The translations under genes were made by a program, and so were the position numbers. From Selaginella moellendorffii (Eukaryota > Plantae > Lycopodiophyta), in NCBI RefSeq assembly GCF_000143415.4, contig NW_003314432.1, forward strand, positions 1 through 64,000: DNA of 64,000 bases, given 5' to 3'. The notes under the pieces were generated by a model. The model saw only the letters and a program-made list of their open reading frames with translations. It had not been told where the DNA came from and searched no databases. Of this stretch, positions 1 to 49,699 are shown in pieces (positions within the stretch are counted from its first letter, which is position 1; each line of letters begins with the position of its first letter).

Positions 1-796
1 GCTGACATCGCCTGCGGTGTTAGCATATGACGATAGGATCAAGCCATACCTAATGGGGGACAAAGGGTACCAACTCCAGCAGCATCTGATGATTCCACAC
101 ACAAGTAAGTCTTCTTCATTCTACTTTCTTTTGTTCACTTGTTTTGGTTGTTGCTCAGCTCCAAACCCGACACCATCCAAGGCAGCTTTCAACCTTCATC
201 ACCACCTTGTTCGGATTGTTATTGAGCAAGCATTTGGACTTCTTAAAATGAAGTTCAGATGCTTGGATCAAAAACAAAGGATCCAGCCAAAGTACCTTCC
301 CAACATCATCAAGAGTTGTTGCATTTTGCACAATTTCTTGATTGATGCTGGGGAGACTGATCTTCAGGCGGAGATCCAAGCTTGGAGGAAAGAGGTGAAA
401 AGGCTCAAGGACCAGGACTTCTTTGTCGATTACGGTGATCCCGAGCAAGCGGAAGGGGAGCCTCGTGAGGAGTTGCACAGTCCAGAGGATGTGAAAGAGG
501 TTAGAGAGAACCTCACGTTTTCCCTCTGTCTTTGCCAGTGGCGTTCGTGTTTGCTTTGAAATTTGCCGGGAAACATTTGAATTTGAATTACGTGAATTTT
601 AAGTGTTCGAATGCATTGTTTTTAAGTGCGAATCCCAGGGTGTTTTTCCACTTAAATCTAAGACATGTGCGAATGCAAAAGTCCTTATAAGTTTACTTTG
701 CAACACAAATATTTTCAATGTGCGAACCCAACTTTCTTAATTTTTAAAGTGGGTCGCTTAAGTTTTTTTTCACTAAATTAATGTTCGAATTGGTCC
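1..796 (+). mobile_element. PIF/Harbinger element, 3' part (DDE_Tnp_4/HARBI1-like transposase C-terminus plus 3' subterminal region)
   Basis: ORF 17-559 has YLMGDKGY, FN..H...RIVIEQAFGLLKMKFRCL and CCILHNF motifs, with a short in-frame GT-AG intron at about 104-158. Repeated TGT(G/T)CGAA motifs at 600-790 end in GTTCGAATTGGTCC (796), a candidate TIR. Paralogous to 48893-49699. Confidence 0.85.
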
Positions 797-1015
797 TTTC
801 TCAACATAAAAGATAATGTTTTGCCAAGCTTACCACAGCCACTGGCAACCTTGATTGCCAATGATGTTGTCCTTGGCTGTGGTATCTATAACCATACAGC
901 TAGGGCCAAAGTTACACCACCAATGGCCCATAGCAAGCACAGCCATGGTGGCACAAGGTCTCGGCCATGGCTAGCACTACCTTGGCTGGCCTTAGCCGTG
1001 GCATAGCCATCTACT

Positions 1016-1861
1016 NNNNNNNNNNNNNNNNNNNNNNNNNNNNNNNNNNNNNNNNNNNNNNNNNNNNNNNNNNNNNNNNNNNNNNNNNNNNNNNNNNNNN
1101 NNNNNNNNNNNNNNNNNNNNNNNNNNNNNNNNNNNNNNNNNNNNNNNNNNNNNNNNNNNNNNNNNNNNNNNNNNNNNNNNNNNNNNNNNNNNNNNNNNNN
1201 NNNNNNNNNNNNNNNNNNNNNNNNNNNNNNNNNNNNNNNNNNNNNNNNNNNNNNNNNNNNNNNNNNNNNNNNNNNNNNNNNNNNNNNNNNNNNNNNNNNN
1301 NNNNNNNNNNNNNNNNNNNNNNNNNNNNNNNNNNNNNNNNNNNNNNNNNNNNNNNNNNNNNNNNNNNNNNNNNNNNNNNNNNNNNNNNNNNNNNNNNNNN
1401 NNNNNNNNNNNNNNNNNNNNNNNNNNNNNNNNNNNNNNNNNNNNNNNNNNNNNNNNNNNNNNNNNNNNNNNNNNNNNNNNNNNNNNNNNNNNNNNNNNNN
1501 NNNNNNNNNNNNNNNNNNNNNNNNNNNNNNNNNNNNNNNNNNNNNNNNNNNNNNNNNNNNNNNNNNNNNNNNNNNNNNNNNNNNNNNNNNNNNNNNNNNN
1601 NNNNNNNNNNNNNNNNNNNNNNNNNNNNNNNNNNNNNNNNNNNNNNNNNNNNNNNNNNNNNNNNNNNNNNNNNNNNNNNNNNNNNNNNNNNNNNNNNNNN
1701 NNNNNNNNNNNNNNNNNNNNNNNNNNNNNNNNNNNNNNNNNNNNNNNNNNNNNNNNNNNNNNNNNNNNNNNNNNNNNNNNNNNNNNNNNNNNNNNNNNNN
1801 NNNNNNNNNNNNNNNNNNNNNNNNNNNNNNNNNNNNNNNNNNNNNNNNNNNNNNNNNNNNN
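1016..1861. other. assembly gap (846 N)
   Basis: Run of N. The flanks match 49918 and 50797 in the paralogous copy. Confidence 0.99.
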
Positions 1862-1964
1862 AAAAGTTCTCCTGGATCTTGCTTGTTAGGCTGGCGTGGC
1901 TAAGACACTGATAAAGGTAAGTTCTGCAAAGATTTAATAAGGTTTTGCTCCTTACTGGGCTTAC

Positions 1965-2230
1965 AGTTAGATCATGGGTGATCAGGAGCTCACAGTTTTG
2001 CACAAGATTTGATCAATCTTGCTTGAGCTAGGATCCTTGATCTGCCATGGGTGGTGATCAATGCATTCACAAAAGGTGCCGGAATGAAATCCAACAGCTT
2101 AAGCACTTTCAAAAGACACCCATTCAGTGATCATTGCATTCCAAGAGACCAAGGTCCTCTTGCTCAAAACTTCCTGCTGTGCTCATGATCACATTTCCAA
2201 GATTGAGCTCCATGTTTCTAGAATTCTTCT
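1965..2230 (-). pseudogene. degenerate PLS-PPR fragment
   Basis: Minus-strand reading gives KRTLVSWNAMIT (P motif) and VNALITTHGRSRILAQAR..DQILCKTVSS (S motif), with stops and frameshifts. Paralog at 50910-51190. Confidence 0.6.
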
Positions 2231-34074: not shown

Positions 34075-34672
34075 TCAGCTACTGTTCATCATAGTTGGAG
34101 CAGAGGGAAAAATGTCACCGTATTTCGTGATGAACCAGCTGATTCTGGACCTAGGTCTCTGATCAAAGAGCCAAATACCAACTGCAAATTTGCATGTAAA
34201 GAGGTGTTCAAGCATCTTCACGGGGTTTTCATTGCATAGAATACACAGTGTTTTGTGAACTGTGAGCCAATCACCAACAGGGATGTTGTCCTGCACAAGA
34301 AGCCAGCTTACCTTAGCTTCCACCAGTGTCTTCCACATATGTACTTCCGATTCTTCAACTTTCGCATAAGCTTGGTGTCAATTTTATCCATCAAAAGCTC
34401 TCTGCCATGCTTAGACCTGTACATAAAAAAAGACACACTGAACTCATTACCTTCCCAGAATAACTGAGCTGGATCCTATATAAGATCAGATATAGGTACT
34501 CCCCAAACTAGTGTATTGCAGAGCATTCTCCCAGTTGAACCTTAGGATCCAGTTCAGTGTATTTCCCTCTCTGATGTATGGTCCTGATCCTTTTACCGAA
34601 GGCAATCCTGGGAACTGGGACCTCCTCGGGAACTATACATGGAAACAGTGCACCACTGTTATGGGGATAAAA
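34075..34672 (-). mobile_element. LINE (L1-like) ORF2 3' end with zf-RVT motif, left part
   Basis: W.LVQDNIPVGDW....CILCNENPVKMLEHLFTCKFAVGIW. Interrupted on the right by the Copia LTR. Confidence 0.75.
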
Positions 34673-34805
34673 TGATGAGAGAAGCCAGGCCTCACGGCCT
34701 AGCGCTCTATAGAAAATGAGAACACTCCCAGAACAATCCCCTGGGATGGATCTCACACAGGATGGGAAAGAAAACTAAGAAAGCCCTAAACTGAAGGAAT
34801 GCGAC

Positions 34806-36947
34806 TTAAGCCAGGTGGCTGTACGCCACGTGGCTGTAACACTGCAAGGACAGGTCGCATACTCCAAGCACTTCTCGATGTTTGCAGAAAACAATAGGTG
34901 GAAAAGCCTTAGTGAATATATCAGCAACCTGGTCCTCAGTTGCCACGTACTTAAGTATCAGCTCTCCTCCCATCACTTGTTTTCTGATGTAGTGGTATTT
35001 TATTTGTATATGCTTCGTCCTGGCGTGATATCTCGGATTCTCTGAAAGAGCAATCGCTGATTGATTATCTGAGAGAATGACCGTGGGTCCTTGTTGCCGT
35101 AGCTGCATACTCGCTACAAGCTCACGAAGCCAGCTCGCCTCTTGTGCTGCCCCTGTCAAAGCTAGATACTCCGCTTCAGTTGTCGACAAGGCTGTCACAG
35201 CTTGCCGCTTGCTGCTCCAAGTTACCACTCCATCACCAAGGAAAAAGCAATAGCCGGATGTAGACTTCCTGTCATCTAAATCCCCTGCTTGCCGCTTGCT
35301 GCTCCAAGTTACCACTCCATCACCGAGGAAAAAGCAATAGCCGGATGTAGACTTCCTGTCATCTAAATCCCCTGCATAATCTGCATCGGCATAGCCTCGC
35401 AAAATAAATGTGTGACCAGAAACCTGCCGTTGATAGCTCAGGCCAAAATTAGCAGTGCCTCTGAGATAGCGCAAGATGTGCTTCACAGCTTGCCAATGTT
35501 GCCAGCCTGGATTCGCCATATACTTAGCCACCTCTCCCACAGAATAAGCAATGTCTGGGCGGGTACAAACAGCCAAGTAGATTAAGCATCCAACGACCTG
35601 GCGATATGGCACAAGCTCCATCTGTTGCTTCTCAGCCTCACTAGGAGACATCTCAGCAGACAAATGAGTACTCGCTTGCATTGGAGTAACGGAAGGATTG
35701 AGGTTCTCGAGCCCAAACCTGTGCAATACTTCCTCCACATAAGCTCGTTGTGAGAGTGTCACAACTCCTGGCCGTGGTCGCTGAACTTGAATCCCAAGGA
35801 AAGTGTGCACGGGGCCAAGATCTTGCATCTCAAACTGGGCTCCTAGTTTTCTCTTGATTTCAGCAAGAAGATCTCTGTTGTTGGAAACAAAGATACCATC
35901 GTCCACATACAAGGCCAAAATGACCAAGGCACCATCCTCAATCTTCATATAAACGTTTGAGTCGGCATGGTTTTTCTGGAATCCAAGAGAAATCAGAAAA
36001 GAATCAGTTTTCTTATACCAGATGCGTGGACTTTGTTTCAGGCCATATAAAGCCTTCTTCAGCCGATAAATCCTTTGGCTCGGATCGAGGCCTGTCGGGA
36101 GCTGGATGTAAACCTCCTCAGGAATTTCTCCATGTAAAAATGCGGTCTTCACATACATTTGCTCCACATAAAGATCATGCTGCGCTGCTAAAGCAAGTAA
36201 CAGCCTGATAGAAGCCATCTTCACGACCGGGCTGAAAGTTTCTGTAAAGTTTATGCCTTCGATCTGAGTAAAGCCTCGTGCCACAAGCCTAGCTTTAAAG
36301 CGCTGCACTTCTCCTGAAGGTCCAGCTTTCACGCAGAAAAGTAGCTTTGTCGAAACTACATTAGCATTGTGAGGAACTTCATCAGGAAGATACCAGGTTT
36401 CATTCTTTGCATGAGCTCGCATCTCAGCATCAATAGCTTCACCCCACGCAGCAGCATAAGGAGATTTCTTAGCTTGTACAAGCGTAACAGGAATCTTCAC
36501 CTCTGCTGCTGTGAACATAGCCGTTCGACTCTGATGATAAGAAGCTCTAGCAGCTACTCGTGCTCGCTTCTCAGCTTGCTCTCGCTGATAAGCTTCACCC
36601 TTCGCTGTATAGGTTAAAGGGCGACCAGAGCGGCTCAAAACCTGGATAACATCAGGATCTCGGTGACGCACAGGTTCAGGAACCATATTCTCAGGTTCAG
36701 GAATATTGTGCTCGGGCTCAGGATCAGGAACCACCTCAGGAACGTGATCAGGCTCTGGAGCTCGTGTCACAGCAGAGGTTGAAGCTCCCGCCAAGTCGAG
36801 GTAGAGGATCATCCTCCTCATCTTCCCATGGATGAAAGAAAACAGGCTGTGAGCTCGCCCTACTTTCTCCACAAAGAAAACCTGTAGAAGGAACTCCTGG
36901 ATCCTTGTGACGTTGAAAATACACACGAGATTCATCAAAGATGACAT
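34806..36947 (-). pseudogene. Copia RT-RNase H segment of pol (frameshifted from integrase)
   Basis: 713-aa ORF with RT motifs and a duplicated RNase H block. Confidence 0.9.
35200..35375 (-). repeat. 87-bp in-frame tandem duplication in Copia RNase H
   Basis: AGDLDDRKSTSGYCFFLGDGVVTWSSKRQ occurs twice; offset 35200 to 35287. Confidence 0.95.
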
Positions 36948-37719
36948 CTCGACTCACAAACTCTTTTCCCGAGTCTAGATGAAGGAGTCGATATCCTCGC
37001 TGCTCATCACTATAGCCCAGAAATACACACTTCTTGGATTTAACATCCAATTTCCGGCGTAGCTCATTAGGAACATGAGAAAAAGCTAGACAGCCAAACC
37101 GTCGGAAGATATCCATGCGTGGACGTTGTCCAGTCCAAGCCTCATAAGGTGTCTTGCCTTGAACAGCTGTGGTCAACACCCTATTACGCACGAAGACAGC
37201 TGTGACTATAGCATGATCCCAAAACCTAGGAGGAAGACCAGCATCGGCAATCATCGTCCTAGCCAGCTCCACCACTGTCCTGTTAAACCGCTCAGCTACC
37301 CCGTTAAGCTCAGGAGTGTATGGAACTGTGAATTGCCGCTGAATTCCTGCTTTCTCGCAGTAATCAGAAAAATGAACGGACACATACTCACCTCCTCCAT
37401 CAGAGCGGAGCACTTTGATGCGTAAATCAAGCTGGTTCTCCACTTCATGCTTATAAGCCTTAAATGCTAGCAAAGCTTCGTCCTTAGTAGCTAAGAACTT
37501 AACAGCCACATACCTCGTAGCATCATCAATAAACGAAATAAAGTACCTCTTCTTACGCTGTGTCATCACTTGAAAAGGGCCACATAAGTCTGAGTGAACC
37601 AGCTGAAGAGGACTTGTCGCCCGAACACTCCCGCCAGAGTTGAACGCCCGACGATGCTGCTTTCCCATTGCATGGCTCGCATAATGGCATTGAAAAAGAC
37701 GTGATGGCCAAGCCATCAA
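36748..37719 (-). pseudogene. Copia integrase segment
   Basis: 323-aa ORF with DDE core and RRKLDVKSKKCVFLGY..GYRL. Confidence 0.9.
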
Positions 37720-38712
37720 CCACGTGGTCTCGCTGCAACTGCTGGATCGTCTTGTGATTCACGTGGCCAAGTCAACGATGCCAAGTTTGGATATCTGCAG
37801 CTCCCCCTAAGATGAACTCGCTGTAGCCACTGTCATCGTAGCTAGCAGCTTCCCTGGAACACACACCTCGCAATCCATCCGGAACAGTCGTCCTATCTTG
37901 CTTGCTGAAGCCACATGTCCAACCTCTGGATGTGTGATCTTGACACGATCACCATGAAATTCCAAGTTGAATCCTTGCTCCATCATTTGTCCAAGGGACA
38001 CGAAGGAGTGTTGAGCCTTGGGGATGTACCACACATGCTTGACTGGAACCACCAAGCCTGTCGGTAGACGCACTTCAATCGTGCCCACACCTTCAACCGC
38101 TAACAAGCTGTTATCTGTGAGTCGCACTTGGCCAGTGCATTTCCTCATCTCCAAAAATAGCTCACCGTTAAAAGTTGAGTGATTCGTTGCTGCCGAATCC
38201 AGCCAAAGAACACGGCTTGTGGTATCCACCTCTACTCCTCGAGTCATCCATGACAAGCCATTAGCCACAGCGGAAGAATCTTCATCGTCACCATCATCTC
38301 GGCGTCGACTTTTAAAATGTGGTGCCGCACCAGAGGAAGATCCACGCTCAGCTTTCAATTTTGTCTCACGACGTTGCTTCTTCACTGGACAATCCCTGCT
38401 CAGGTGCCCACGCTTTGAACACGTCTCACACTTCAAATTAAATTCTCGCTTGGTGGTTGGCTTTTCCTCGGTGCTGTTGGAGTGTTTATTTCCAAGTTGA
38501 TTAAAGACAGAGGAGCGCCCTGCTTGTACTTGCTGATTACCACAAGTCACCATGGCAATCCCATCTTGCTCAACAGCATTGCCTTCACCTATAATGGTTT
38601 TCTCGTGTTGGATGAGCTCAGCAAAAATCTGCCGCTGTGTAATGTCAGGAATCTTCTTGATATAATGAAGATGAGACTTCATAGCATAAGTTGCAAACCC
38701 TTTGAACAGAAC

Positions 38713-39616
38713 CAAGGTTGGTCCTGACCATTCCAAACGCCGACCAGCCGACCGCCCGACTGTGGTTATCGACCAGCTGAAAAAATGCCGAACGGCTAAA
38801 CGGTTCACAAAGTTTTTTTGATTAAAAAAAAATTATTTTTAATAAAACTAGGTCCGGCACTATAAACAGTTGCAATCATTGCATGAAAATATAGACTTTT
38901 CACAACATTAAATGGTATGGCATTCAAGAAAATGAATTTTGATATCACATCATTTAAATTCGTGTTTCTTGTCATCAAGCATTTCCTTAATGTTGCCATT
39001 TCACATTCACTTTTAACCAACAGATAATCCCTCATGACCTATAGAAGCACTCATAAGCTGAAATTGACTAATACTTTGTGTACCAGCTCCAGAAGCAAAT
39101 GCCCCATCAAAATGCCTACTTTGGAAATTTGCTGTAGAAGGTAAAGACAAAAGGGCATTTGCGATTTATTCCACAAACATTCAGCAAGCTTGGTTCTGAA
39201 CATGAAAAATTGCTGGAATCGCTAGAATCACTAAAATCAAATCTCTGGAATTGTAATTTCCATTTGAGGGCAAAATTACAGTTCACGCGTTGCGGGGACT
39301 GGGCGATTTGTGAGGCCTCAGCGAGCTGCTCCACGCTCAATAGAAAGTGGAGGCCGACCGACTGGAGAGTGTCGCCCTAGCTCGGTACGAACGCGGATTC
39401 GATGTAGGCTTGCTGTGGATGGGTGGATCACTCCATAACAGCAGGAGAACAGCAAAGCGGTGGAGATGCAATGGCGATGGCGATAACCTAGCCGCAGCAG
39501 CATCGTTAATCTAGCCCCTACGAGCATGATTCCCGAACAGAATCACCAAATGGGGCTGACCGACCGCGTTCGGCGGCAGTCGGGATTTTGGCCGAACGTG
39601 GTCGCGACCAACAATG
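38713..39616 (-). mobile_element. non-autonomous hAT transposon (904 bp) inserted in Copia gag
   Basis: Perfect 8-bp TSD AACAGAAC (38705-38712 and 39617-39624). Imperfect 18-bp TIRs CAAGGTTGGTCCTGACCA / TGGTCGCGACCAACAATG. CCGAC-rich subtermini. Internal remnant ISKFIFLNAIPFNVVKSLYFHAMI..AGPS resembles hAT transposase. Confidence 0.93.
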
Positions 39617-40285
39617 AACAGAACTGCATTAAACTCTTGATCTGTCACAGCAGCTTCTGGGTCTAGCAGTTGAATCTCCACCACTTTGCACTGAAGCCTG
39701 GTGATGTAGTCTTGCACGCGCTCATGTGGCTACTGCTCCAGGTTCTATAGCTCACTGCGACGAAGAATCACATCCACATCTTCTTGCAGGTCCAGTCCCA
39801 TAATTTCACAAATTGACTTCCAATTCTTAGCAAAACTCTTCTCCACATTCACGTGGACACTCTAGAGAGGGCCAAGTCCTCCTCCTAATGCTCCATTTGC
39901 CCTAGCATCCAGATCTTTCCACTCATTGTATGGATCTGTGTCATCATCGTCCTTGGACAGACATTTTCTTGATCCAGATATTACAGGCCACAGTCCCCAC
40001 CTCATGAACCAGAACTGTGCACGTTCTTTCCAAGCAAGGAAATTCGTCCTATCGAACTGCTCCATGTCTCTGGAGGAAGAAGACGACACCATCCTGTCCT
40101 AGCGTCTATGGGACTGCTCGTGCCAAAAAAAAATCTAACCTATTGCTCTGATACCATGATGAGAGAAGCCAGGCCTCACGGCCTAGCGCTCTATAGAAAA
40201 TGAGAACACTCCCAGAACAATCCCCTGGGATGGATCTCACACAGGATGGGAAAGAAAACTAAGAAAGCCCTAAACTAAAGGAATG

Positions 40286-41250
40286 TTGAGGTGATGGGGT
40301 TGTTTCCATAACAAAGATGATTTGAGTCTCAGCACCATCAAGCATTATCCGATCACGAACCTCAATAACTTCAGTTTGTAAAGCAAGATGAAGGCGATCA
40401 CAAGGGATGCTGCCTTAAGCTTTGATGTGGAGTTTTCATCCTGGGTTGTAATGGGTTGTCATGAGGCCATGTTTGCTCCAAGCGGACGTTAAACAAATAC
40501 CTGACTTTACCTTTTTCATTGTATCATACCTTGTCCACTGCTGAGGAAGAAAAACAAGATCCCAACAAGAACTTTGCTGTAAATGATGGCTTGCTAGCTC
40601 TTTGTAGATCCAATAAGTCTTTGATCAAAGCTCCCACATTTCTATGCCACCTAGGCCAAAAACCTCTACCCAAGCTTGGAGCTGAACAGTCACCTATATA
40701 CTGTTGATTACTGTTCTTATGCGCTACGTTGAAGAACAAGCAATCAGCTAATGCCTCTGTCAGATGGTCTGGTTCTTTCTGACTTAACCTGGGTAGGAGT
40801 GTGACTTCCATATCTTCAACATCTCTTTTGCTATTCCATCCTGGACTTTCTTTGTGTTGAGAGGAGCAATGCCAATCGATTCCTTGTTTATAGTTACCAC
40901 CTTGTCTAGGCAAGATCTTCTGCAGTTGAGCTCTGAAGAGGAGGTGCCAGCTTTGGTTTCGTGGATATAAACCTGACACAAGCACTTTGAAGAGAAGAGC
41001 TTTGGATTGAATTCCTGGGTGTGGCACATTCCGAATAACTGAATTCCACTCTACTTTTGCCCGGACTTTGCACCTGCTGGAGTTTCTAAAGTTTCTACAT
41101 ATGTCGTTGGTGATCAAGTGTTGGTGAGTTATTGGGTGTTGCAGATCCAAGGTTTTTGCTGCGTAGGTCCTTATCACATCGTCCAACAAGTTGGTCCACA
41201 AATCTATGTGGTGACACTCAATGCACAATGTCAAAAGAAGATCCATGTGA
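40286..41250 (-). mobile_element. LINE ORF2 remnant, right part
   Basis: 240-aa ORF 40524-41246 with RAKVEWNSV...PGIQSKALLFK....Y...SWHLL, similar to the post-RT region of plant L1. Same strand as the zf-RVT piece on the other side of the Copia. Confidence 0.6.
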
Positions 41251-41639
41251 AGCAGTTAGCTCAATATTGTGTGTGAACGGATTGATGATATATTCTATGG
41301 TAGATATAGATAAACTCAACAAGATTGGAATACACTAACTTTTTAATAATAATAAATTAACAATTTTTAATGTGTATTTATGGAGCCTACAAGATCAAGA
41401 GTGAGAGGTGTTAATCACATTATTTATATCCTGAGGTTTAGGGATATGAGGGAGTAAGTTTTATGGCCCAGGTAAGTTAGAGGAAGGAAAAAAAAAGAAT
41501 TAATTAGAGTGAAAATGCAAGTTATTGTGAAATTAGAGTATAAATGTGAGTTAAGAGTTAACATGAGCTAAGAGTAAAAACGTGATGTAGCAGCTTAAAA
41601 GAGGGAAGAAGGAATGCTCGGATGGAGTTCCACCAGGTA

Positions 41640-42600
41640 GAAAAGACAAGTCATACCTCAAGCCTCGGATTGCTCCCAACCCCCTGCCTCCACCCGGTTG
41701 CCTACTTTAACCAAGCCCCGAACCACCCAGCAGTCTTGGCGCACAGGGATGACATCAGCCCTAACCTCTTGCTCCACTGCTCCTACTTCTGAGCTGCTAG
41801 CAGCTTCTCCCCTCCTTAAAAAAAAAGGTCTGTTGTTCTCTTGGAGTTCAAGAGGCATCCTCTTCACCGTCTCCTCTGTTTTTGCTAGCTAGTTAGCTCT
41901 TACAAGAAGGAGCACAAGCCAAGTTCAGCTCCATTCTCAGCTCTATCATCTCCTCTTTAAGACACCTCACCTCTTTGAAGCCATTCAGGAGAGCTAGCAC
42001 GCTTCACGTCTAGACGTCCCCCCCTTTTTTTCTTTTTGCGATTGTCTCTTCAAACTCATCATACTTATTTAACTCACCAAACCTTACCAAGCCGAGTGCA
42101 GGTTTTGAAACCCCATGAGTCACCTTGGCCTTTTTCCATCTTCCAGTTGAGCTCTCCAACAATCTTGACGTGTGGATGCGTGCAAACTGCTCCTTGAGCC
42201 AGGACCATTTCTCCAGGAGATAACTTATGCTACAACACTCTCCGCGACGATCTCAATGTGGAAAGATCCACAAAGCTGTCCCACTCATCATAGTTGTAGA
42301 AGAAATCATCCTCATACTGCATCTGCAACCTTGCTCGAGCCCAAGCCTCCGCCATTGCAAGCTTCTCCCTCATCTTGATCACTTGAGGCGGCAAAACAAG
42401 TCCAGGTCCTGAGGAACAACAATGGAATACACCTTTCCCGGGTACCTACAGTGGACGATGTGGTGTTTCAGATCGCAGCGGAATGATAACTTGATGAAAG
42501 CAACAAAACCATCAAGCTCGCTCTGTGGGGATCAATTATCATCTCCTCCTTTGAAGCAATGAGCAGCAGGCCTTGATCACATCCAGAAGTACTAGAGATA
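41640..42600 (-). mobile_element. possible LINE ORF1 remnant
   Basis: Minus-strand coding-like text (YDEWDSFVDLS, GFQNLHSAW, lysine/glutamate-rich tail) upstream of the ORF2 remnant. Weak similarity only. Confidence 0.3.
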
Positions 42601-43605
42601 GTCTGCAAAAGCAAGTTTGACACCAGTTATTTTGGCAACACAGAAAAAAAAGAAGAAAAAGAAGAAAAATAAACTCAAGTTTCAAAATTTATGGAGATCC
42701 ATACAATCCAAATCAAGATCAATCCTCCACGAACTTAATGCCGCTTTCAGCACCTCCAAGCTCTGCCGAAAGACGTAGCCATGGTATGCCACAATCGTTT
42801 GCTTGAAAATCTGAAGATGTCAATCGAAGCATGCAAGCAAAAACATGAAGTAAAGAAGCGCAGGTGGACAACAAAGGAGATGAACTGAGCGAGGCCAAGA
42901 ACACATATAAGGACTGAATGTAAGCACGTGAGGCCTCACGCGGTTTTTTCCTCCGTGCGTGGCTTCATGTGCGAAGAGTTTGGTGTGGTAAGGTATGTTG
43001 CAGAACAGCCAGAAGCCCAGGGTGAATATAAGTACGTGAGGCCTTGTGAGGTTTTACCACCGCCCGAGGACTCCTGTGCATGGGCCCCAGGCGAGAGTCT
43101 TTTGCGAAAGTGTTCTGCATGAAACTGGTGCCCTGAGGCTTCTGGCCGAAGAGCATTTTTTATTTAATTTGTGTAGAGTGTGGTTTATTTTTGCATATTG
43201 AGTGTATCGATATCTTTTAGTTAGCAGATTATATTGAAGAACTGAAGACTACCTACAGTTAAGTGCATGCAGCAACAGATCATATAAAAAATGAATGCAG
43301 AGAATAATAAATCGGGATTTCTAGGAAGTTCGTGCGTGTTGTTAGTAATAATAATAATAATCATAAAAACCTGATGTTCAGCCAGTTAGAAGATTATCTG
43401 AAAATTATGCATGTACTGATTCTTCAGCTCTTGAGCTTGCTGCTGGCTCACTTTCTATATATATCAAAGAGATTTTTTTTTAACAATAAACATCTAAGCT
43501 GCTGCAGTTAAGCTGTGACATTGTAAAGTTTAAAAAGGAAAAGAATTAGAAAAAGAAAAAAACAGAAAACACGAGACTGCAATAACAAATCGGGATTTCT
43601 AGGGT

Positions 43606-46600
43606 ATGCGTGCGGCGCTAGGGTTTGTGTGGTGTCTGTCATTTCTCAACAATCTCATGGAGTGGAAAACGTTTTTCAGGGATCCCACTTTCTGGTGGCA
43701 CAACAGGTTCAAGAAGAAAAACAAGTTCTTCTCAGAGTCCTACCCGGATTTCAAACATGTTTCTACCGGAGAGAGCCTGTGGATCGCCAACAGGAAAACA
43801 TCAACCTGGGTCTCTGCAAAACTCGAGTCGCTCGCTGACCCAGCTGTAGGTAAGGCCACCACGGCCCGCTACAAATCTCCACATGCCCCACCTGTAGCTG
43901 GTGATGAACCGGTGAGTTTCGGGAGGCTGATACACCGCGTGAGACACTCAGCTGAGAGCAGATCCCTTTCTTTGGGAAAACAAGCCCATGAAGCTGTGCT
44001 CAAGAGTGATGAGCACAAAAGCAACATCTACTTGTTGACGGGATTGATCGATATGTACTGCAAGTGTGGCGAGCTTGAGGAGGCTCGCAAGATTTTCGAC
44101 TCCATGGGAACCCGGAGTGTTGTGTCCTACAACGCGATCATCCAGGGCTGCGGCTCGAACGGGCAAGCTGAACTTGCTCTGGAGTACTACTCTGCCCTGA
44201 GAGCTGATAACACCATTCAACCCGACGATTGGACACATGTCGCGGTGATCAGCGCCTGCTCCACACTTGCTACCGAATCCAGCGAGAAGAGGGAGAGAGC
44301 TCTACGCATCGGGATGGAGATCCATTCAATGCTGAGCAAGGAGAAGAAACAGCTAGATCTGTTCGTGGCGAATTGCCTGGTAGACATGTACTCCAAGTGT
44401 GGCGAGCTTGAGGAGGCTCGCAAGATTTTCCACTCCATGGGAACTCGGAGTGTTGTTTCCTACACCGCGATCATCCAGGGCTGCAACACGAACGGGCGAG
44501 CTGAACTTGCTCTGGAGTACTACTCTGCCCTGAGAGCTTGTACCACCATTCAACCCAACAATCGGACTCATGTCGCGGTGATCAGCGCCTGCTCCAGACT
44601 TGCTACCGAATCCAGCGAGAAGAGGGAGAGAGCTCTACGCATCGGGATGGAGATCCATTCAATGCTGAGCATGGAGAAGAAACAGGTAGATCTGTTCGTG
44701 GCGACTTGCCTGGTAGACATGTACTGCAAGTGTGGCGAGCTTGAGGAGGCTCGCAAGATTTTCCACTCCATGGGAACTCGGAGTGTTGTGTCCTACAACG
44801 CGATCATCCAGGGCTGCGGCTCGAACGGGCAAGCTGAACTTGCTCTGGAGTATTACTCTGCCCTGAGAGCTTGTACCACCATTCAACCCAACGATCGGAC
44901 ACATGTCGCGGTGATCAGCGCCTGCTCCAGACTTGCTACCGAATCCAGCGAGAAGAGGGAGAGAGCTCTACGCATCGGGATGGAGATGCATTCAATGCTG
45001 AGCAAGGAGAAGAAACAGCTAGATCTGTTCGTGGCGAATTGCCTGGTAGAAATGTACTGCAAGTGTGGCGAGCTTGAGGAGGCTTGCAAGATTTTCCACT
45101 CCATGGGAACTCGGAGTGTTGTGTCCTATACCGCGATCATCCAGGGCTGCAACACGAACGGGCGAGCTGAACTTGCTCTGGAGTACTACTCTGCCCTGAG
45201 AGCTGATAACACCATTCAACCCGACGATCGGACTCATGTCGTGGTGATCAGCGCCTGCTCCACACTTGCTACCGAATCCAGCGAGAAGAGGGAGAGAGCT
45301 CTACGCATCGGGATGGAGATCCATTCAATGCTGAGCAAGGAGAAGAAACAGCTAGATCTGTTCGTGGCAAATTGCCTGGTAGACATGTACTCCAAGTGTG
45401 GCGAGCTTGAGGAGGCTCGCAAGATTTTCCACTCCATGCGAACTCGGAGTGTTGTGTCCTACAACGCGATCATCCAGGGCTGCGGCTCGAACGGGCGAGC
45501 TGAACTTGCTCTGGAGTACTACTCTGCCCTGAGAGCTGATAACACCATTCAAGCTGATGCTTGCACCTACACCTGCGTCCTTGTTGCTTGCGGGAGTGTG
45601 ATGGCGATCAAGCTCGGGAGGGAGATTCACCAGCTGGCGAAGCATAAAGGGCTGCTGAAAAACAATCCAGTTCTGGGCTCCAGCCTGGTGAGCTTCTACG
45701 GCAAATGCGGCGATGTTGATTCTGCTCAGGAAGCGTTTGACGAGTGCCGAGCTCGGGACAACACGGGTCTCTGGAACTCTCTCCTACAGGCTTACACTCT
45801 CCAGGGCCGATCGATCGAGGCCTTGGAGCGTTTCTATTCCATGACTCAGGAGGAGGGCTGTAAAGCTGACGATGTGAGTTTTGTCTCGGTGTTGAACGCT
45901 TGCAGCCATGGTGGTCTGGTGGGGAAAGGAAGGCAGCTTCTGGATGAAATGCCCAAGCAGTATGGAGTCAAGCCACGTCTGGAGCATTATGTGTGCCTGA
46001 TCGATATGCTCGGGCGAGCTAACCTCCTCGACGAAGCTGTGAGAGTTCTCAGAGCCATGCCTTTTGAACCGGATGCAGTGGTTTGGAGGTCCCTGCTCGG
46101 AGCCTGCCGGAAGTGGAAGAATTACACGATCGGCAAACTCGCGTTTGAGCGTCTTGTGGAGATGGATCCCAAGAGCGGCACGCCCTACGCATTGATGGCC
46201 AATATATTTGGAAACCTGGGGATGCTCAGTGAAAGGGCCACTGTTGTGGAGAGAATGAGAGGTGAAGGCAGCTTCAGGGAGCCCGGGAGAAGCTGGTGGA
46301 CGGATGTTAGCTCAGGAAAAGTGCATTCTTTTTCTGTCGGGGATAGGAGTCACTCACAGAGCGACGAGATTGCAGCCAAGCTCAAGCAATTGTTGCTGAG
46401 AATGAAAGAGGAGGGGTACGCGAGCGATGTGATCAACGTTCTAAAAGACATACCCGAGGAAGAGAAAGAGGATCACCTGTGCGGCCACAGTGAGAAGCTT
46501 GCGCTGGGGTGTGCTCTGGTGAACTCGCAGCAGAAGGAGACCATCAGAATTGTGAAAAATCTCCGAGTTTGTGATGATTGCCATGCGGCCACTGCTCTCA

Positions 46601-46695
46601 TCTCTAAGCTGGAAAAAAGGCTAATCATCTGCAAAGATGCCAGTCGGGTTCATGTGTTCCAGGATGGCAGATGTTCCTGTGACAACTACTTTTGA
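43606..46695 (+). CDS. PLS-class PPR-E1-E2-DYW RNA-editing factor with N-terminal OSB-type PDF motif (1029 aa, intronless ORF)
   Basis: Uninterrupted ORF with about 20 P/L/S motifs, P2-L2-S2 (LNACSHGGLV, EHYVCLIDMLGRA), E1/E2, PG box PGRSWWTD, HSEKLA, IVKNLRVCDDCH, H.F.DG.CSC, ending NYF. The exact start codon is uncertain (43606 or 43657). Confidence 0.95.
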   Translation: MRAALGFVWCLSFLNNLMEWKTFFRDPTFWWHNRFKKKNKFFSESYPDFKHVSTGESLWIANRKTSTWVSAKLESLADPAVGKATTARYKSPHAPPVAGDEPVSFGRLIHRVRHSAESRSLSLGKQAHEAVLKSDEHKSNIYLLTGLIDMYCKCGELEEARKIFDSMGTRSVVSYNAIIQGCGSNGQAELALEYYSALRADNTIQPDDWTHVAVISACSTLATESSEKRERALRIGMEIHSMLSKEKKQLDLFVANCLVDMYSKCGELEEARKIFHSMGTRSVVSYTAIIQGCNTNGRAELALEYYSALRACTTIQPNNRTHVAVISACSRLATESSEKRERALRIGMEIHSMLSMEKKQVDLFVATCLVDMYCKCGELEEARKIFHSMGTRSVVSYNAIIQGCGSNGQAELALEYYSALRACTTIQPNDRTHVAVISACSRLATESSEKRERALRIGMEMHSMLSKEKKQLDLFVANCLVEMYCKCGELEEACKIFHSMGTRSVVSYTAIIQGCNTNGRAELALEYYSALRADNTIQPDDRTHVVVISACSTLATESSEKRERALRIGMEIHSMLSKEKKQLDLFVANCLVDMYSKCGELEEARKIFHSMRTRSVVSYNAIIQGCGSNGRAELALEYYSALRADNTIQADACTYTCVLVACGSVMAIKLGREIHQLAKHKGLLKNNPVLGSSLVSFYGKCGDVDSAQEAFDECRARDNTGLWNSLLQAYTLQGRSIEALERFYSMTQEEGCKADDVSFVSVLNACSHGGLVGKGRQLLDEMPKQYGVKPRLEHYVCLIDMLGRANLLDEAVRVLRAMPFEPDAVVWRSLLGACRKWKNYTIGKLAFERLVEMDPKSGTPYALMANIFGNLGMLSERATVVERMRGEGSFREPGRSWWTDVSSGKVHSFSVGDRSHSQSDEIAAKLKQLLLRMKEEGYASDVINVLKDIPEEEKEDHLCGHSEKLALGCALVNSQQKETIRIVKNLRVCDDCHAATALISKLEKRLIICKDASRVHVFQDGRCSCDNYF
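43663..43833 (+). other. PDF motif (OSB/PTAC9 ssDNA-binding-type) coding segment
   Basis: WKTFFRDPTFWWHNRFKKKN...YPDFKHVSTGESLWI......WVSAKL vs recalled OSB consensus W..FF.NP..WWDNR..K.N...PDFKHK.TGEALW.....WV...L. Confidence 0.85.
44053..45552 (+). repeat. 333-bp tandem array (about 4.5 copies; 111-aa P-L-S unit)
   Basis: TGTGGCGAGCTTGAGGAGG recurs at 44065, 44398, 44731, 45064 and 45397. No indels between units. Confidence 0.98.
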
Positions 46696-47499
46696 AAACA
46701 TGTCAGTGCTCTTTCTTGCAGTTATCCCTGGTTTTAAACCCACTCCGTGAGTCAAGCAGAAACACGGGCCGCTGAGTGAGCATGCCTCGTCAAAGTACCT
46801 CATGTTCCGGGAGCAAGGTGATGGCGGCTTGCGGCATGACCAACTTTGGGTTTGTGCTCCTAGAGCACGTTGAAGACGTGTGGAAGGTGGTAATGACAGC
46901 ATTTGTTTCTTGCAACGTACTCACCAGTTCCTTGGCAACGTCTTCCTTCCTGAGCTTGTCATGAGTGGTGACCTGCTTGCTCTCTCCTGTGACAACTTCT
47001 TCCAGCCTCTGGTGCCCAACCTCAAGGCTCTCTTGTGGATGGAGCTAGCCCTACACAGTGTGTGTGTGTGTATCAACCAGCAGATGCACAAATCGTTGAG
47101 AATTAGCAACAACTGTGTATCAAGTGTACTAGTGTACATGTACATGTGTTTCAGCTAAATATAATGGGCCAAATACACCGAAGAAATGTAAATTAAGAAG
47201 TGCAAAAGAAATGAAAATAAAAATTGTCCATCCTCATCAGTTTGCTGAAATTAAGTTGGATTCAATTCTTCCAGCTCCAAATATTGTCTGATTGAGTTGT
47301 AAGTTAATTAATAGTAGAAAATAAGAAAAAAACAAACATTGAAAAAATAGTGTTTGATAATATCTTCTTTGCTTTTGAACAAATCTAAAGTGTTGGGGTT
47401 ATTTTATTTTAAGGGAAGTTGTTAAAAATTATTCCGGAAATATTCGAGAAGATTCTGTGAAGAAGATCTGATCTCGCGGCACGGCCGGAGAATTAAAAC

Positions 47500-49699
47500 A
47501 TGGCAGCAGCCGCGGAGATTTATGAGGAGAGGCCTGAGGAGGTGGAGGAAGCAGGTAATCCGATTTTAGGGTTGGAAGAGGAAACAGAGCTCTGGGAAAT
47601 GGGGCCAATCGAGCTGGATCTGGGCCTGCTTGTGCTCTATCTTCACCAACACGAGGAGGAAGAGGTGCCCATGGAGGGAGAGGTGGCCATGGAGTGGGAG
47701 GAGCGCGCGGGGTGGCCGGGGTTGGCCGCGGATCTCTGAATCTGGCCCCGGGAGGATTAGGCCATGGTGCCCCGGGAGGAGGAGGCCATGGTTCTACTCT
47801 AGGAGGAGGACGCCGCGGTTCTTCTCCGGGAGGAGGAGGCCATGGATCATCGCCAGGACAAGCCTCGGTGGGAGGAGCCGAAGCCACAGCGGGAGGAGTC
47901 CAAGCCGCGCCCGGAGGAGCCCAAGCCACGTCTGGAGGAGTTCCCCTGGAGGGAGCTCCAACTGCTTTGAGAACCAGAGATGGCGGTGAGTTTACATTTC
48001 TTAGGTTGCATGCATGCATGAGTGATTGAGAGCTCCCGGCAGGGTCATGAAGAAGAGGGAGATGACACCGTCCCCGATCTGGAACAAGACCCGGATGGAT
48101 GCTCACATGGAGGAGCTCGACCACGAGGCTGTCCAGTTTGTGGATACCTCGGGTTTTGCTGCACCTGCTGCTGCGAAGAGAACCCGGGGAAAGAACTGGA
48201 ACCATGCTGAGACCATGCTCCTGATTGATCTCGTTCGGGAAAAACATCTCGCGAAGATTGCGGGGGAGGGAGGAGCAGCCAGCATGTTCTCATGACGAAG
48301 ACACAGCGCTGGAATCTCATCTTTCACCCTTTTGCTTTAGGGTTTAAATGCACATTGCGGATGACAAGAGCCCCGCTGCCTGAGGAAGAAGACCGTGAAC
48401 TTGAGGTTCGTCGGGCTGTGATTGGGAGGAGGTTTTGCATCGGCCTGTGGTGGGTGAAGCCTCGAAATGTCACCACCTGGAGTAAGTTTTCTTTGGAGTA
48501 TTACGATGTGGGGAGGTGGAAGAGGAAACTTCAGATGGAGAAGAGGACCTTCTTCACCATTTGTGGCATGCTGGAGAGTGAAATCCGGAAGCAAGATGAG
48601 TGTGGTGCCGGTGGATGTTCGACTGGGGGTGACTTTGTACAAGCTTTTCAAGAACACAGATTACTTGGACCTAATGTTGCTGACTAGACTGGACGGTGAG
48701 AGCTACTACGACCGGAAGCAGCGGTACTTGGTCATCTTGCAAGGGGTTTGTGATGCCCAGAAGAGGTTCCTCAGTGTCTACGCTGGGTGGCCAGGATGGT
48801 TCTAAAATGTTCTTTTTGCTTTCAGGACGCATCCACGACATGAGAGTTTTTTGTAATTCAACCCTCAGGAACAAGATTGTAGCAAGGGAGCTGCTGACAT
48901 CGCCCGTGGTGTTAGCATATGATGATAGGATCAAGCCATACCTAGTGGGGGACAAAGGGTACCAACTCCAGCAGCATCTGATGATTCCACACACAAGTAA
49001 GTCTTCTTCATTCTACTTTCTTTTGTTCACTTGTTTTGGTTGTTGCTCAGCTCCGAACCTGACACCATCCAAGGCAGCTTTCAACCTTCATCACCACCTT
49101 GCTCGGATTGTTATTGAGCAAGCATTTGGACTTCTTAAAATGAAGTTCAGATGCTTGGATCAAAAACAAAGGATCCAGTCAAAGTACCTTCCCAACATTA
49201 TCAAGAGTTGTTGCATCTTGCACAATTTCTTGATTGATGTTGGGGAGACTGATCTTTGGGCGGAGATCCAAGCCTGGAGGAAAGAGGTGAAAAGGCTCAA
49301 GGACCAGGACCTCTTTGTCGATTATGGTGATCCTGAGGAAGTGGAAGGGGAGCCTCGTGAGGAGTTGCACAGTCCAGAGAATGCGAAAGAGGTTAGAGAG
49401 AACCTCACGTTTTCCCTCTGTCTTTGCCAGTGGCGTTCGTGTTTGCTTTGAAATTTGCCGGGATATAATTCTAAACATTTGAATTTGAATTTGAAATTTC
49501 AAAATTTGAATTAAGTGAATTTTAAGTGTTCGAATGCATTGTTTTTAAGTGCGAATCCGAGGTGTTTTTCCACTTAAATCTATGACATGTGCGAATGCAA
49601 AAGTCCTTATAAGTTTACTTTGCAACACAAATGTTTTCAATGTGCGTTCTTAATTTTTAAAGTGGGTCGCTGAAGTTTTTTTTCACTGCGAATTGGTCC
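47500..49699 (+). mobile_element. PIF/Harbinger element with Myb/SANT-like gene remnant and internally deleted transposase
   Basis: Gly-rich exon, then KRTRGKNWNHAETMLLIDLVREK..KTQRWNLI (Myb/SANT-like, 48170-48320). Transposase WWVKPR..W, MEKRTFFTIC, YYDRKQRY..ILQGVCDAQKRF..AGWPG, intron, IHDMRVF, GDKGY, EQAFGLLK, CILHNF. The GAIDG segment is missing. Candidate 3' end AATTGGTCC at 49699. Confidence 0.88.

What the first reader, a model, noticed from the sequence alone, without database searches (positions are those of the whole stretch)
43606..46695. OSB-type PDF ssDNA-binding motif fused to an intact PPR-DYW cytidine deaminase
Seen: residues 20-76 of the 1029-aa ORF (nt 43663-43833) read WKTFFRDPTFWWHNRFKKKN..YPDFKHVSTGESLWI..WVSAKL, in frame with about 20 PLS repeats, E1/E2 and a DYW domain with intact HxE and CxxC. 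Established: the PDF motif is the hallmark of plant organellar ssDNA-binding OSB proteins, where it follows an SSB-like OB fold and contributes to ssDNA binding. PLS-DYW proteins are sequence-specific organellar C-to-U editors and normally have only a transit peptide upstream of the repeats. Here there is no OB fold and the PDF motif is N-terminal. Inference: this architecture could tether an editor to nucleoids or transcription bubbles for co-transcriptional editing, add non-specific single-strand affinity, or allow deamination of ssDNA. I am not aware of a characterised PDF-PPR-DYW protein, but uncharacterised homologs may exist in lycophyte and fern proteomes.
Basis: partly seen in the sequence, partly recalled or inferred. 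Interest (0 to 1): 0.88.

Follow-up and report, generated by a model that had tools for sequence, protein, structure and literature searches.

The report
PPR-DYW editing factor with OSB-type PDF domain
This Selaginella gene encodes an organellar RNA-editing-type protein (PPR repeats plus a DYW deaminase) that carries at its N-terminus the small single-stranded-DNA-binding "PDF" domain known from plant OSB proteins. The same unannotated architecture is found in dozens of genes of lycophytes, ferns and a moss.

Summary
Window 43606-46695 (+) is an uninterrupted 1029-aa ORF with about 20 PLS-type PPR motifs, E1/E2, E+ and a DYW deaminase domain with HSE and CDDCH intact. Residues 19-83 are a genuine OSB-type PDF motif. 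They score 37 bits (E 5e-14) against a profile built only from the three PDFs of a Sinapis OSB, and 66 bits (E 1e-22) against 408 PDFs from non-PPR proteins. The AlphaFold model of the segment finds Arabidopsis OSB1-4 as its only Swiss-Prot matches. There is no OB fold.

The gene is not a one-off:
- It belongs to a multi-copy Selaginella moellendorffii family. A collinear locus has the same intact ORF, and first-stage readers noted five other pieces of this genome.
- PDF-PPR proteins also occur in Diphasiastrum (about 70 clusters, 17 with DYW), Adiantum and Sphagnum.
- Pfam has no PDF model, and no searchable paper links PDF to PPR.

RNA contigs join the PDF to the first PPR motifs without an intron, but they come from a near-identical sister copy. 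This copy has substitutions at two nearly invariant PDF positions (D32H, P66S).

The most likely function is an accessory single-strand nucleic-acid-binding module on an editing factor. That function is untested.

The parts
43606..46695 (+). Complete 1029-aa ORF (stop included): PDF, linker, PLS PPR array, E1/E2, E+, DYW
   Evidence: The collinear S. moellendorffii locus L001 has an equally uninterrupted 1029-aa ORF.
43600..43602 (+). In-frame TAG directly upstream of ATG 43606, so the ORF cannot extend 5' without splicing
43606..43656 (+). 17-aa hydrophobic leader (one R, no acidic residue). It contains an indel-prone GT-rich run at about 43624-43639 and may not be translated in all copies.
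   Evidence: The X4 RNA contig has +GT after 43631. Paralogue P0151 is frame-shifted here, and the RefSeq models P0152 and P0172 start at M18.
43657..43659 (+). Alternative start codon (M18) immediately before the PDF motif
43660..43854 (+). PDF motif (aa 19-83; core 19-76 = nt 43660-43833). WWHNR at 43693-43707, PDFKH at 43744-43758.
43837..43995 (+). Pro/Ala/Ser-rich linker (aa 78-130) between the PDF and the PPR tract. Predicted disordered where modelled: model residues 72-90, that is aa 82-100, have pLDDT below 50.
43996..46110 (+). PLS-class PPR array (about 20 motifs, counted by eye from the translation; Pfam hits from aa 135 to about 835)
44053..45552 (+). In-frame tandem repeat inside the PPR array: 333 nt (111 aa, one P-L-S triplet) x 4.5 copies, 94% matches
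   Evidence: L001 holds the same array length.
46120..46404 (+). E1/E2 (Pfam E_motif aa 839-897) and E+ (aa 906-933)
46414..46689 (+). DYW cytidine-deaminase domain (aa 937-1028). HSE at 46486-46494, CDDCH at 46570-46584. The C-terminus reads CSCDNYF.

Best explanation
The ORF is one copy of a multi-copy Selaginella family of PLS-class PPR-E-DYW proteins. This is the protein type that performs site-specific C-to-U RNA editing in plant organelles. The protein carries a genuine OSB-type PDF domain at its extreme N-terminus, joined to the PPR tract by a roughly 50-aa linker predicted to be disordered where modelled. This much is shown. What follows is inferred. PPR tracts bind RNA in parallel, with N-terminal motifs on the 5' nucleotides and the DYW domain at the edited C. 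The PDF domain would therefore sit 5' of the PPR footprint. There it most likely acts as an accessory, sequence-non-specific binder of single-stranded nucleic acid, rich in aromatic and basic residues. It would raise local affinity and help capture an unfolded substrate, either the RNA itself or single-stranded DNA next to it, while the PPR code and the DYW domain give specificity and catalysis. The architecture is old and recurrent in non-seed land plants (moss, lycophytes, ferns) and has gone unnoticed because Pfam has no PDF model.
For: Identity of the parts.
One transcript: RNA-type contigs from four studies run 43586/43632-44082 without a joint, across the PDF, the linker and the first PPR motifs. 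A second block, 45523-46799, covers the 3' part.
Not an accident:
- The collinear locus L001 keeps the full 1029-aa ORF at 96% nt identity.
- A second Selaginella family (P0075/P0155, 910 aa) has a PDF at aa 4-77 with a canonical 70-nt GT-AG intron inside it. Its PDF is sister to the window's (99/97 support).
- Diphasiastrum has about 70 PPR clusters with 1-3 N-terminal PDFs, 17 with DYW ending in ...CSCGDYW.
- Sphagnum and Adiantum have PDF-PPR proteins too.
- A 4755-nt contig (P0020) holds three PDFs plus a PPR tract in one ORF.
Constraint in the PPR context: among 51 Diphasiastrum paralogues the PDF is the best conserved N-terminal segment, at 77% mean identity against 55% upstream and 68% downstream. 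97 of 107 PPR-linked PDFs keep PDF[KRE]H.
Chemistry: 13 aromatic and 11 basic residues in 59 aa.
Literature: the PDF motif is the ssDNA-binding element of OSBs (PMC6963530, PMC4166229). N-terminal PPR motifs dominate RNA affinity and initial contact (PMC13324415).
Against: No binding or editing data exist for any PDF-PPR protein. Recombinant AtOSB1 and AtOSB2 prefer ssDNA to RNA (PMC4166229, citing Zaegel 2006), which favours the DNA-tether rival over RNA assistance. In this copy two nearly invariant PDF residues are replaced (D32H, P66S), and aa 1-130 differ from L001 by 7 non-synonymous and 0 synonymous changes. Two paralogues (P0151, P0173) have frame-disrupted PDFs but keep the PPR-DYW part. 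The RNA contigs represent a third, near-identical variant, so expression of this exact copy is not shown. Both Selaginella families start essentially at the PDF, leaving no obvious transit peptide, so organellar location is unproven.
Confidence: 0.55

Rival explanations
1. Nucleoid or ssDNA tether. The PDF binds single-stranded DNA, as it does in OSBs, at displaced strands of transcription bubbles, R-loops or replication and recombination intermediates. This concentrates the editing factor on organellar nucleoids so that editing occurs co-transcriptionally.
For: The PDF is the ssDNA-binding element of OSB1, and OSB1 and OSB2 prefer ssDNA over RNA (PMC6963530, PMC4166229). The long linker, predicted disordered where modelled, fits a tether. 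The lineages with many PDF-PPRs are heavy editors: Selaginella uncinata has more than 3400 chloroplast sites (reference cited in PMC13324415).
Against: There is no localisation or binding data. Nothing in the sequence distinguishes DNA from RNA preference. The Selaginella copies lack an evident presequence.
Confidence: 0.25
2. In this particular copy, and perhaps in the young Selaginella DYW subfamily, the PDF is a decaying or dispensable relic. It was inherited from an ancestral PDF-PPR gene, and the protein works, if at all, as an ordinary PPR-DYW factor.
For: D32H and P66S fall at positions that are at least 90% invariant. There are 7 non-synonymous and 0 synonymous changes in aa 1-130 against L001, and overall omega is 0.82, against 0.35-0.41 for E-DYW and the non-repeat PPR part. 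Paralogues P0151 and P0173 have frame-broken PDFs. The RNA contigs carry D and P, not the window's H and S.
Against: The ORF is fully open through the PDF in the window and in L001. Most paralogues (P0001, P0152, P0153, P0154, P0172) keep an intact consensus PDF. The window PDF still scores 66 bits. Counts of 7 against 0 are too small for a selection test.
Confidence: 0.2
3. The PDF redirects the DYW deaminase to single-stranded DNA, making the protein an organellar DNA C-to-U mutator or editor.
For: Only the co-occurrence of an ssDNA-binding motif with a cytidine deaminase.
Against: The PDF is at the end of the protein opposite to the DYW domain, with about 20 RNA-code PPR motifs and E1/E2 between them. 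Many family members lack DYW altogether: E-only proteins in Diphasiastrum and Sphagnum, and P0075. The PDF therefore cannot be specifically linked to deaminase targeting.
Confidence: 0.03
4. The PDF acts mainly as a protein-protein or oligomerisation module, or as part of an unconventional import signal, rather than as a nucleic-acid binder.
For: AtOSB2 is a tetramer (PMC6963530). The Selaginella proteins start at the PDF with no separate presequence. The segment is basic and the model begins with an amphipathic-looking helix.
Against: Diphasiastrum and Sphagnum members have long presequence-like N-termini in front of the PDF, so the PDF is not needed as a signal there. No evidence assigns OSB oligomerisation to the PDF.
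Confidence: 0.07

Closest known systems
[quoted passage not shown]
   Same: A roughly 55-aa motif with the W..ff.nP..WWDNR...PDFKH..TGeaLW....P.WV signature. 33-39% identity, with a predicted fold superposing at 1.4-4.1 A on OSB1 181-254, OSB2 306-358, OSB3 371-426 and OSB4 294-342.
   Different: No OB/SSB-like domain. The motif is N-terminal instead of C-terminal, occurs as a single copy, and is fused to a PPR-E-DYW protein. D is replaced by H in WWDNR, and P by S before the final W.
PLS-class PPR-E-DYW RNA editing factors (e.g. Physcomitrium PPR56/PPR65, which edit alone in E. coli; PMC6397227, PMC10482289)
   Same: A P-L-S motif array, P2-L2-S2, E1/E2, a PG box, and a DYW domain with HxE and CxxCH.
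   Different: An additional N-terminal PDF domain. A 4.5-fold near-identical tandem duplication of one P-L-S triplet. The C-terminus reads NYF instead of DYW. No evident transit peptide.
Unnamed PDF-PPR proteins: Diphasiastrum complanatum (e.g. KAJ7568880.1 = P0146, and P0181, P0187 with DYW), Sphagnum fallax and S. magellanicum (P0245-P0247), Adiantum capillus-veneris (KAI5061374.1, KAI5060681.1), and S. moellendorffii XP_024517303.1 (P0075)
   Same: The same architecture: 1-3 PDFs N-terminal to a PLS PPR tract, with E or E-DYW. A single origin of the PPR-linked PDFs is not rejected (AU p = 0.28).
   Different: Most have presequence-like N-termini of 20-140 aa before the first PDF. Many have two or three PDFs. 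Many end at E, without DYW.
PPR proteins with other accessory domains (PPR-SMR, PRORP = PPR-NYN) and the trans-acting MORF/RIP editing helpers (from general knowledge, not tested here)
   Same: The concept of a PPR RNA-recognition tract combined with an extra module that alters nucleic-acid handling.
   Different: The extra module here is a PDF motif, is N-terminal, and has not been described in the papers I could search.

Membership tests
PDF motif (as defined in OSB proteins) | A roughly 50-aa motif with the conserved Pro-Asp-Phe signature and flanking W/WWDNR/LW/P.W residues, significant against a PDF profile | tested here: met
   PDFKH at aa 47-51. 37.4 bits (E 5.5e-14) against a 3-sequence Sinapis OSB profile and 66.4 bits (E 1.1e-22) against a 408-domain non-PPR profile; shuffles reach at most 8.4 bits. 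The invariant R, K, P, D, F and W columns are all present. Two nearly invariant positions differ: D to H and P to S.
PDF motif (as defined in OSB proteins) | Same fold as the PDF regions of reference OSB1-4 | tested here: met
   AF2 model with pLDDT of about 90 over aa 21-60. The only Foldseek matches in Swiss-Prot are OSB1-4 PDF regions at probability 1.00. AFDB cluster hits include proteins named OSB1/2/3. Both sides are predictions, because no solved PDF structure exists.
PDF motif (as defined in OSB proteins) | Binds single-stranded DNA | not testable with these tools
   Needs EMSA or fluorescence polarisation with recombinant protein.
OSB protein family | An SSB-like OB-fold domain N-terminal to the PDF motif(s). 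PMC13393729 requires both domains. | tested here: not met
   No SSB/OB Pfam hit anywhere in the 1029-aa ORF at E<=10. The PDF starts at aa 19. True OSB-like hits do give weak SSB hits. The protein is therefore not an OSB.
PLS-class PPR-DYW RNA editing factor | Tandem P/L/S PPR motifs followed by E1/E2 | tested here: met
   PPR_2 at 4.7e-76, PPR at 6.2e-68, E_motif at aa 839-897, Eplus at 906-933.
PLS-class PPR-DYW RNA editing factor | DYW deaminase domain with the zinc-binding HxE and CxxC(H) signatures | tested here: met
   DYW_deaminase at 1.4e-31 over profile positions 1-92 of 93. HSE at 961-963, CDDCH at 989-993, CSC at 1023-1025. The terminal tripeptide is NYF, not DYW.
PLS-class PPR-DYW RNA editing factor | Import into mitochondria or plastids | not testable with these tools
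   No targeting predictor is available. The N-terminal leader is only 17 aa and is unstable among paralogues.
PLS-class PPR-DYW RNA editing factor | Site-specific C-to-U editing activity on a defined organellar target | not tested
   I made no PPR-code-to-target prediction. The near-identical triplet repeats make target prediction ambiguous. An experiment is needed.

The most novel reading that the evidence does not exclude
PDF-PPR(-E/-DYW) proteins form an unrecognised ancient class of organellar editing factors in bryophytes, lycophytes and ferns. A built-in OSB-type single-strand-binding domain couples the editor to nucleoid ssDNA, R-loops or unfolded nascent RNA. This would make it a cis-acting counterpart of the helper proteins that seed plants supply in trans. 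It may be one of the features that allowed the massive editing loads of lycophytes.
Probability: 0.3. Interest if true: 0.8.

Novelty: new variant of a known kind. Interest (0 to 1): 0.65.

Why it matters
PPR-DYW proteins are the catalysts of plant organellar RNA editing and are being engineered as programmable base editors. How they find unfolded substrates, and whether editing is physically coupled to transcription on nucleoids, remain open questions. A natural, recurrent fusion of these editors to the ssDNA-binding PDF domain, in dozens of genes of lineages with thousands of editing sites, offers a directly testable handle: delete or transplant the PDF in the established E. coli or in-organello editing assays. 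It also enlarges the known range of the PDF motif, which until now was treated as a hallmark of OSB proteins only. Finally, it shows that a Pfam-type model for PDF is missing, which hides this architecture from routine annotation.

Tried and rejected
Ideas considered and rejected:
- Chance resemblance. Rejected on profile scores, shuffles and fold matches.
- The PDF belongs to a separate upstream gene or exon. Rejected: the ORF is continuous, a stop lies directly upstream, and RNA contigs cross the PDF-PPR junction without a joint.
- A single accidental fusion. Rejected: there are paralogues, a second Selaginella family with an intron inside the PDF, and homologues in three other genera.
- The RefSeq 497-aa model (P0001) shows real introns that remove the repeats. 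Judged a likely artefact, because both loci have an uninterrupted 1029-aa frame. I cannot exclude it, because short-read contigs break inside the repeat.
- Zero read depth in the flanks proves the runs are RNA. The small contig totals (12-31 Mb) still point to RNA.

Searches that led nowhere:
- Word-indexed searches with the window's and P0075's PDF regions returned only close paralogues.
- The ESM Atlas feature search gave only sub-threshold phage hits, score at most 0.72.
- PDB sequence and fold searches found nothing.
- Zaegel 2006 and Gutmann 2020 are not held in the library.
- No encoding contig is on record for P0146.

The PDF tree and AU test could neither show nor reject a single origin of the PPR-linked PDFs.
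Full report
**1. The observation**

Window 43606-46695 (+) is an uninterrupted 1029-aa ORF, with an in-frame TAG three codons upstream of the ATG.

Pfam assigns the following:
- many PPR repeats (PPR_2 at 4.7e-76, PPR at 6.2e-68);
- an E motif at aa 839-897;
- an E+ motif at aa 906-933;
- a full-length DYW_deaminase domain at aa 937-1028, E 1.4e-31.

The catalytic signatures are intact: HSE at 961-963, CDDCH at 989-993, and the PG box at 893-897. The C-terminus reads CSCDNYF. Reading the motifs off the translation gives L-S, then five P-L-S triplets, then P2-L2-S2.

Pfam finds nothing in the first 120 residues and no SSB/OB domain anywhere in the protein.

**2. Is the N-terminal segment really a PDF motif?**

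Yes, on three lines of evidence.

An exhaustive phmmer search of aa 1-100 against 1.84 billion representative proteins gave 336 hits at E<=1e-3 and 80 at E<=1e-10. All aligned to query residues about 19-77. Most were 250-500-aa proteins with one to several copies of the motif near the C-terminus. Where sources give a name, these are OSBs, for example "organellar single-stranded DNA binding protein 3" of Euphorbia peplus. P0017 of Sinapis alba shows the textbook layout of a weak SSB/OB hit followed by three PDFs.

To avoid circularity I built a profile from those three Sinapis PDFs alone. The window's aa 19-76 score 37.4 bits (E 5.5e-14 for one sequence), while the best of 500 shuffles of the N-terminus scores 8.4 bits. 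A profile of 408 PDFs from 144 non-PPR proteins scores aa 19-83 at 66.4 bits, E 1.1e-22.

An AlphaFold2 model of aa 11-100, made with a 99-sequence PDF alignment, has pLDDT of about 90 over aa 21-60. Its elements are a helix, three short strands and two further helices, followed by a low-confidence tail. Against the AlphaFold models of Swiss-Prot, its only significant matches are Arabidopsis OSB1, OSB2, OSB3 and OSB4. Each aligns at its PDF region with probability 1.00, 33-39% identity, and rmsd of 1.4-1.5 A for OSB2-4. AFDB fold clusters give the same picture.

No solved structure resembles the motif by sequence or by fold.

Pfam has no PDF model. Even bona fide OSBs and PDF-rich N-termini get no hit over their PDFs. 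That explains why the architecture is invisible to routine annotation.

The protein is not an OSB, because the OB-fold-like domain that defines OSBs (PMC13393729) is absent.

**3. Is the fusion real?**

The ORF is continuous. Contigs of four RNA-type runs from four studies cover 43586 or 43632 to 44082 in one piece without any joint. That stretch spans the leader, the PDF, the linker and the first PPR motifs. A second block, 45523-46799, covers the 3' part. The assemblies break only inside the tandem repeat.

The contigs are not from exactly this copy:
- They share 15 of 16 listed differences with a collinear S. moellendorffii locus, L001 (GL377592.1:365321-380410).
- They agree with the window at eight other positions where L001 differs.
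- They therefore represent a third, near-identical family member.

L001 aligns with the window from 40286 to 46799, at 96.2% identity over the gene, and contains an equally uninterrupted 1029-aa ORF. The 497-aa RefSeq model for that locus, which splices out the repeats, is probably an artefact.

**4. The family**

*S. moellendorffii, DYW subfamily.* RefSeq holds at least seven near-identical PDF-PPR-E-DYW proteins on several scaffolds.
- Five have an intact consensus PDF.
- Two (P0151, P0173) have the first half of the PDF thrown out of frame.
- First-stage readers independently flagged the same architecture on five other pieces of this genome, one "half hidden by offset frames". I did not inspect those loci.

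*S. moellendorffii, second family.* P0075/P0155 (910 aa; PLS PPR repeats and no Pfam DYW or E-motif hit) has a PDF at aa 4-77. It is interrupted by a canonical 70-nt GT-AG intron. Its PDF is sister to the window's with 99/97 support. The fusion therefore predates the split of two Selaginella PPR lineages.

*Outside Selaginella.*
- A search with the Diphasiastrum PDF returned 72 proteins of 607-1930 aa, every one a PPR protein.
- About 69 are Diphasiastrum complanatum clusters, and 17 of them carry the DYW domain.
- Three are Sphagnum PDF-PPR-E proteins.
- These proteins have one to three PDFs, always N-terminal to the PPR tract and usually behind a presequence-like N-terminus of 20-140 aa. The DYW members end in the canonical ...CSCGDYW.
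- Adiantum capillus-veneris has two further PDF-PPR proteins.
- A 4755-nt Logan contig encodes three PDFs plus a PPR tract in one ORF.

*Conservation and origin.* Among 51 Diphasiastrum paralogues the PDF is the best conserved part of the N-terminal region, at 77% mean pairwise identity against 55% upstream and 68% downstream. The hallmark residues are kept in about 90% of 107 PPR-linked PDFs. A single origin of the PPR-linked PDFs is neither shown nor rejected (AU p = 0.28).

No PPR protein appeared among the Swiss-Prot or AFDB-cluster fold matches, and I saw none from seed plants. The searches were not exhaustive.

**5. Peculiarities of this copy**

The window reads WWHNR and KTSTW where at least 90% of 99 aligned PDFs, L001, and the expressed variant all have D and P.

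| Region compared with L001 | Result |
|---|---|
| aa 1-130 | 7 non-synonymous, 0 synonymous changes |
| Whole ORF | omega 0.82 |
| Repeat region | omega 0.87 |
| Non-repeat PPR part | omega 0.41 |
| E-DYW | omega 0.35 |

The counts are small. The pattern allows relaxed constraint on the N-terminus of this young subfamily.

A GT-rich run lies between ATG 43606 and ATG 43657 and is indel-prone. One RNA contig has +GT there, and P0151 is frame-shifted at the same place. Two RefSeq models start at M18. The real start may therefore be M18, immediately before the PDF.

Both Selaginella families thus begin essentially at the PDF, with no obvious transit peptide. The Diphasiastrum and Sphagnum members do have one. 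How the Selaginella proteins reach organelles, if they do, is unexplained.

**6. Mechanism**

*Shown:* the parts, their order, the low-confidence linker (pLDDT below 50 from model residue 72), and an aromatic and basic PDF with 13 W/F/Y and 11 K/R in 59 aa.

*Established elsewhere:*
- The PDF motif is the ssDNA-binding element of OSBs (PMC6963530, PMC6451138).
- AtOSB1 and AtOSB2 prefer ssDNA over dsDNA and RNA (PMC4166229).
- In PPR-DYW proteins the N-terminal PPR motifs dominate affinity and make the first contact with the 5' part of the target (PMC13324415).
- Single PPR-DYW proteins can edit on their own in E. coli (PMC6397227).

*Inferred:* the PDF sits 5' of the PPR footprint and adds sequence-independent single-strand binding.

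I rate the two main versions as follows:
- Assistance in capturing unfolded substrate: about 0.4 for the mechanism alone.
- Tethering to nucleoid ssDNA or R-loops for co-transcriptional editing: about 0.25.

For this specific copy, a decaying or dispensable PDF is a real possibility (0.2). ssDNA deamination is unlikely, because many family members have no DYW domain and the PDF lies at the end of the protein opposite to the deaminase.

**7. Novelty**

Full-text searches found no paper that connects the PDF motif or OSB with PPR proteins. A 2026 survey of OSB evolution required both the OB and PDF domains, so it would have excluded these proteins. Zaegel 2006 and Gutmann 2020 could not be read, so an earlier passing mention cannot be excluded.

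I classify the finding as a new variant of a known kind: a PPR-DYW editing factor with a previously unremarked accessory domain that defines a large, old family in non-seed plants.

Noticed in passing
window 44053-45552: In-frame tandem repeat inside the PPR array: 333 nt (one 111-aa P-L-S triplet) x 4.5 copies at 94% identity. The collinear locus L001 has the same total length but a differently shuffled set of variants, and omega across the repeat is about 0.87. This fits ongoing unequal exchange or gene conversion. Another first-stage note (s1-361228) covers it.
   Followed up: partly
window 34672-40286 (minus strand ORFs 34806-36947, 36748-37719, 37807-38808): Ty1/copia-type retrotransposon: gag zinc knuckle, Pol beta-barrel, integrase and RVT_2, split over three ORFs. 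It is inserted upstream of the gene and absent from the collinear S. moellendorffii locus L001, so it is a polymorphic or copy-specific insertion.
   Followed up: partly
L001 6001-9090 (GL377592.1) and RefSeq XP_024536012.1: The RefSeq 497-aa model removes the whole tandem-repeat region and a second 39-aa stretch as introns, although the locus has an uninterrupted 1029-aa frame. This is probably a gene-model artefact caused by the repeats.
   Followed up: partly
L003 4079-4148 (GL377648.1): The second Selaginella PDF-PPR gene (P0075) has a canonical 70-nt GT-AG intron inside the PDF-coding segment, after aa 26. The window's gene has none there. Comparing this intron position with OSB genes could reveal how the fusion arose.
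   Followed up: no
window 43624-43639: A GT-rich microsatellite-like run between the two candidate start codons. +GT variants occur in an RNA contig and in paralogue P0151, shifting the frame of the 17-aa leader.
   Followed up: partly
proteins P0041 (Coptis chinensis, 1526 aa) and P0018 (Striga hermonthica, 1063 aa): PDF repeats appear in a kinesin-motor protein model and in an 'ICR2' model that also has an SSB-like domain. These are most likely gene-model fusions of an OSB gene with its neighbour. I did not check them.
   Followed up: no
window 47429-48247 (minus): A 272-aa proline-rich ORF with no Pfam hit. A gene with a product of the same length is called about 5 kb downstream of the PPR gene in L001, so the spacing differs between the two loci. 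L001 also has an insertion of about 200 nt at the position equivalent to 46799.
   Followed up: no
window 1-2000: Very low GC (25%) compared with 35-54% elsewhere in the window. Not examined.
   Followed up: no
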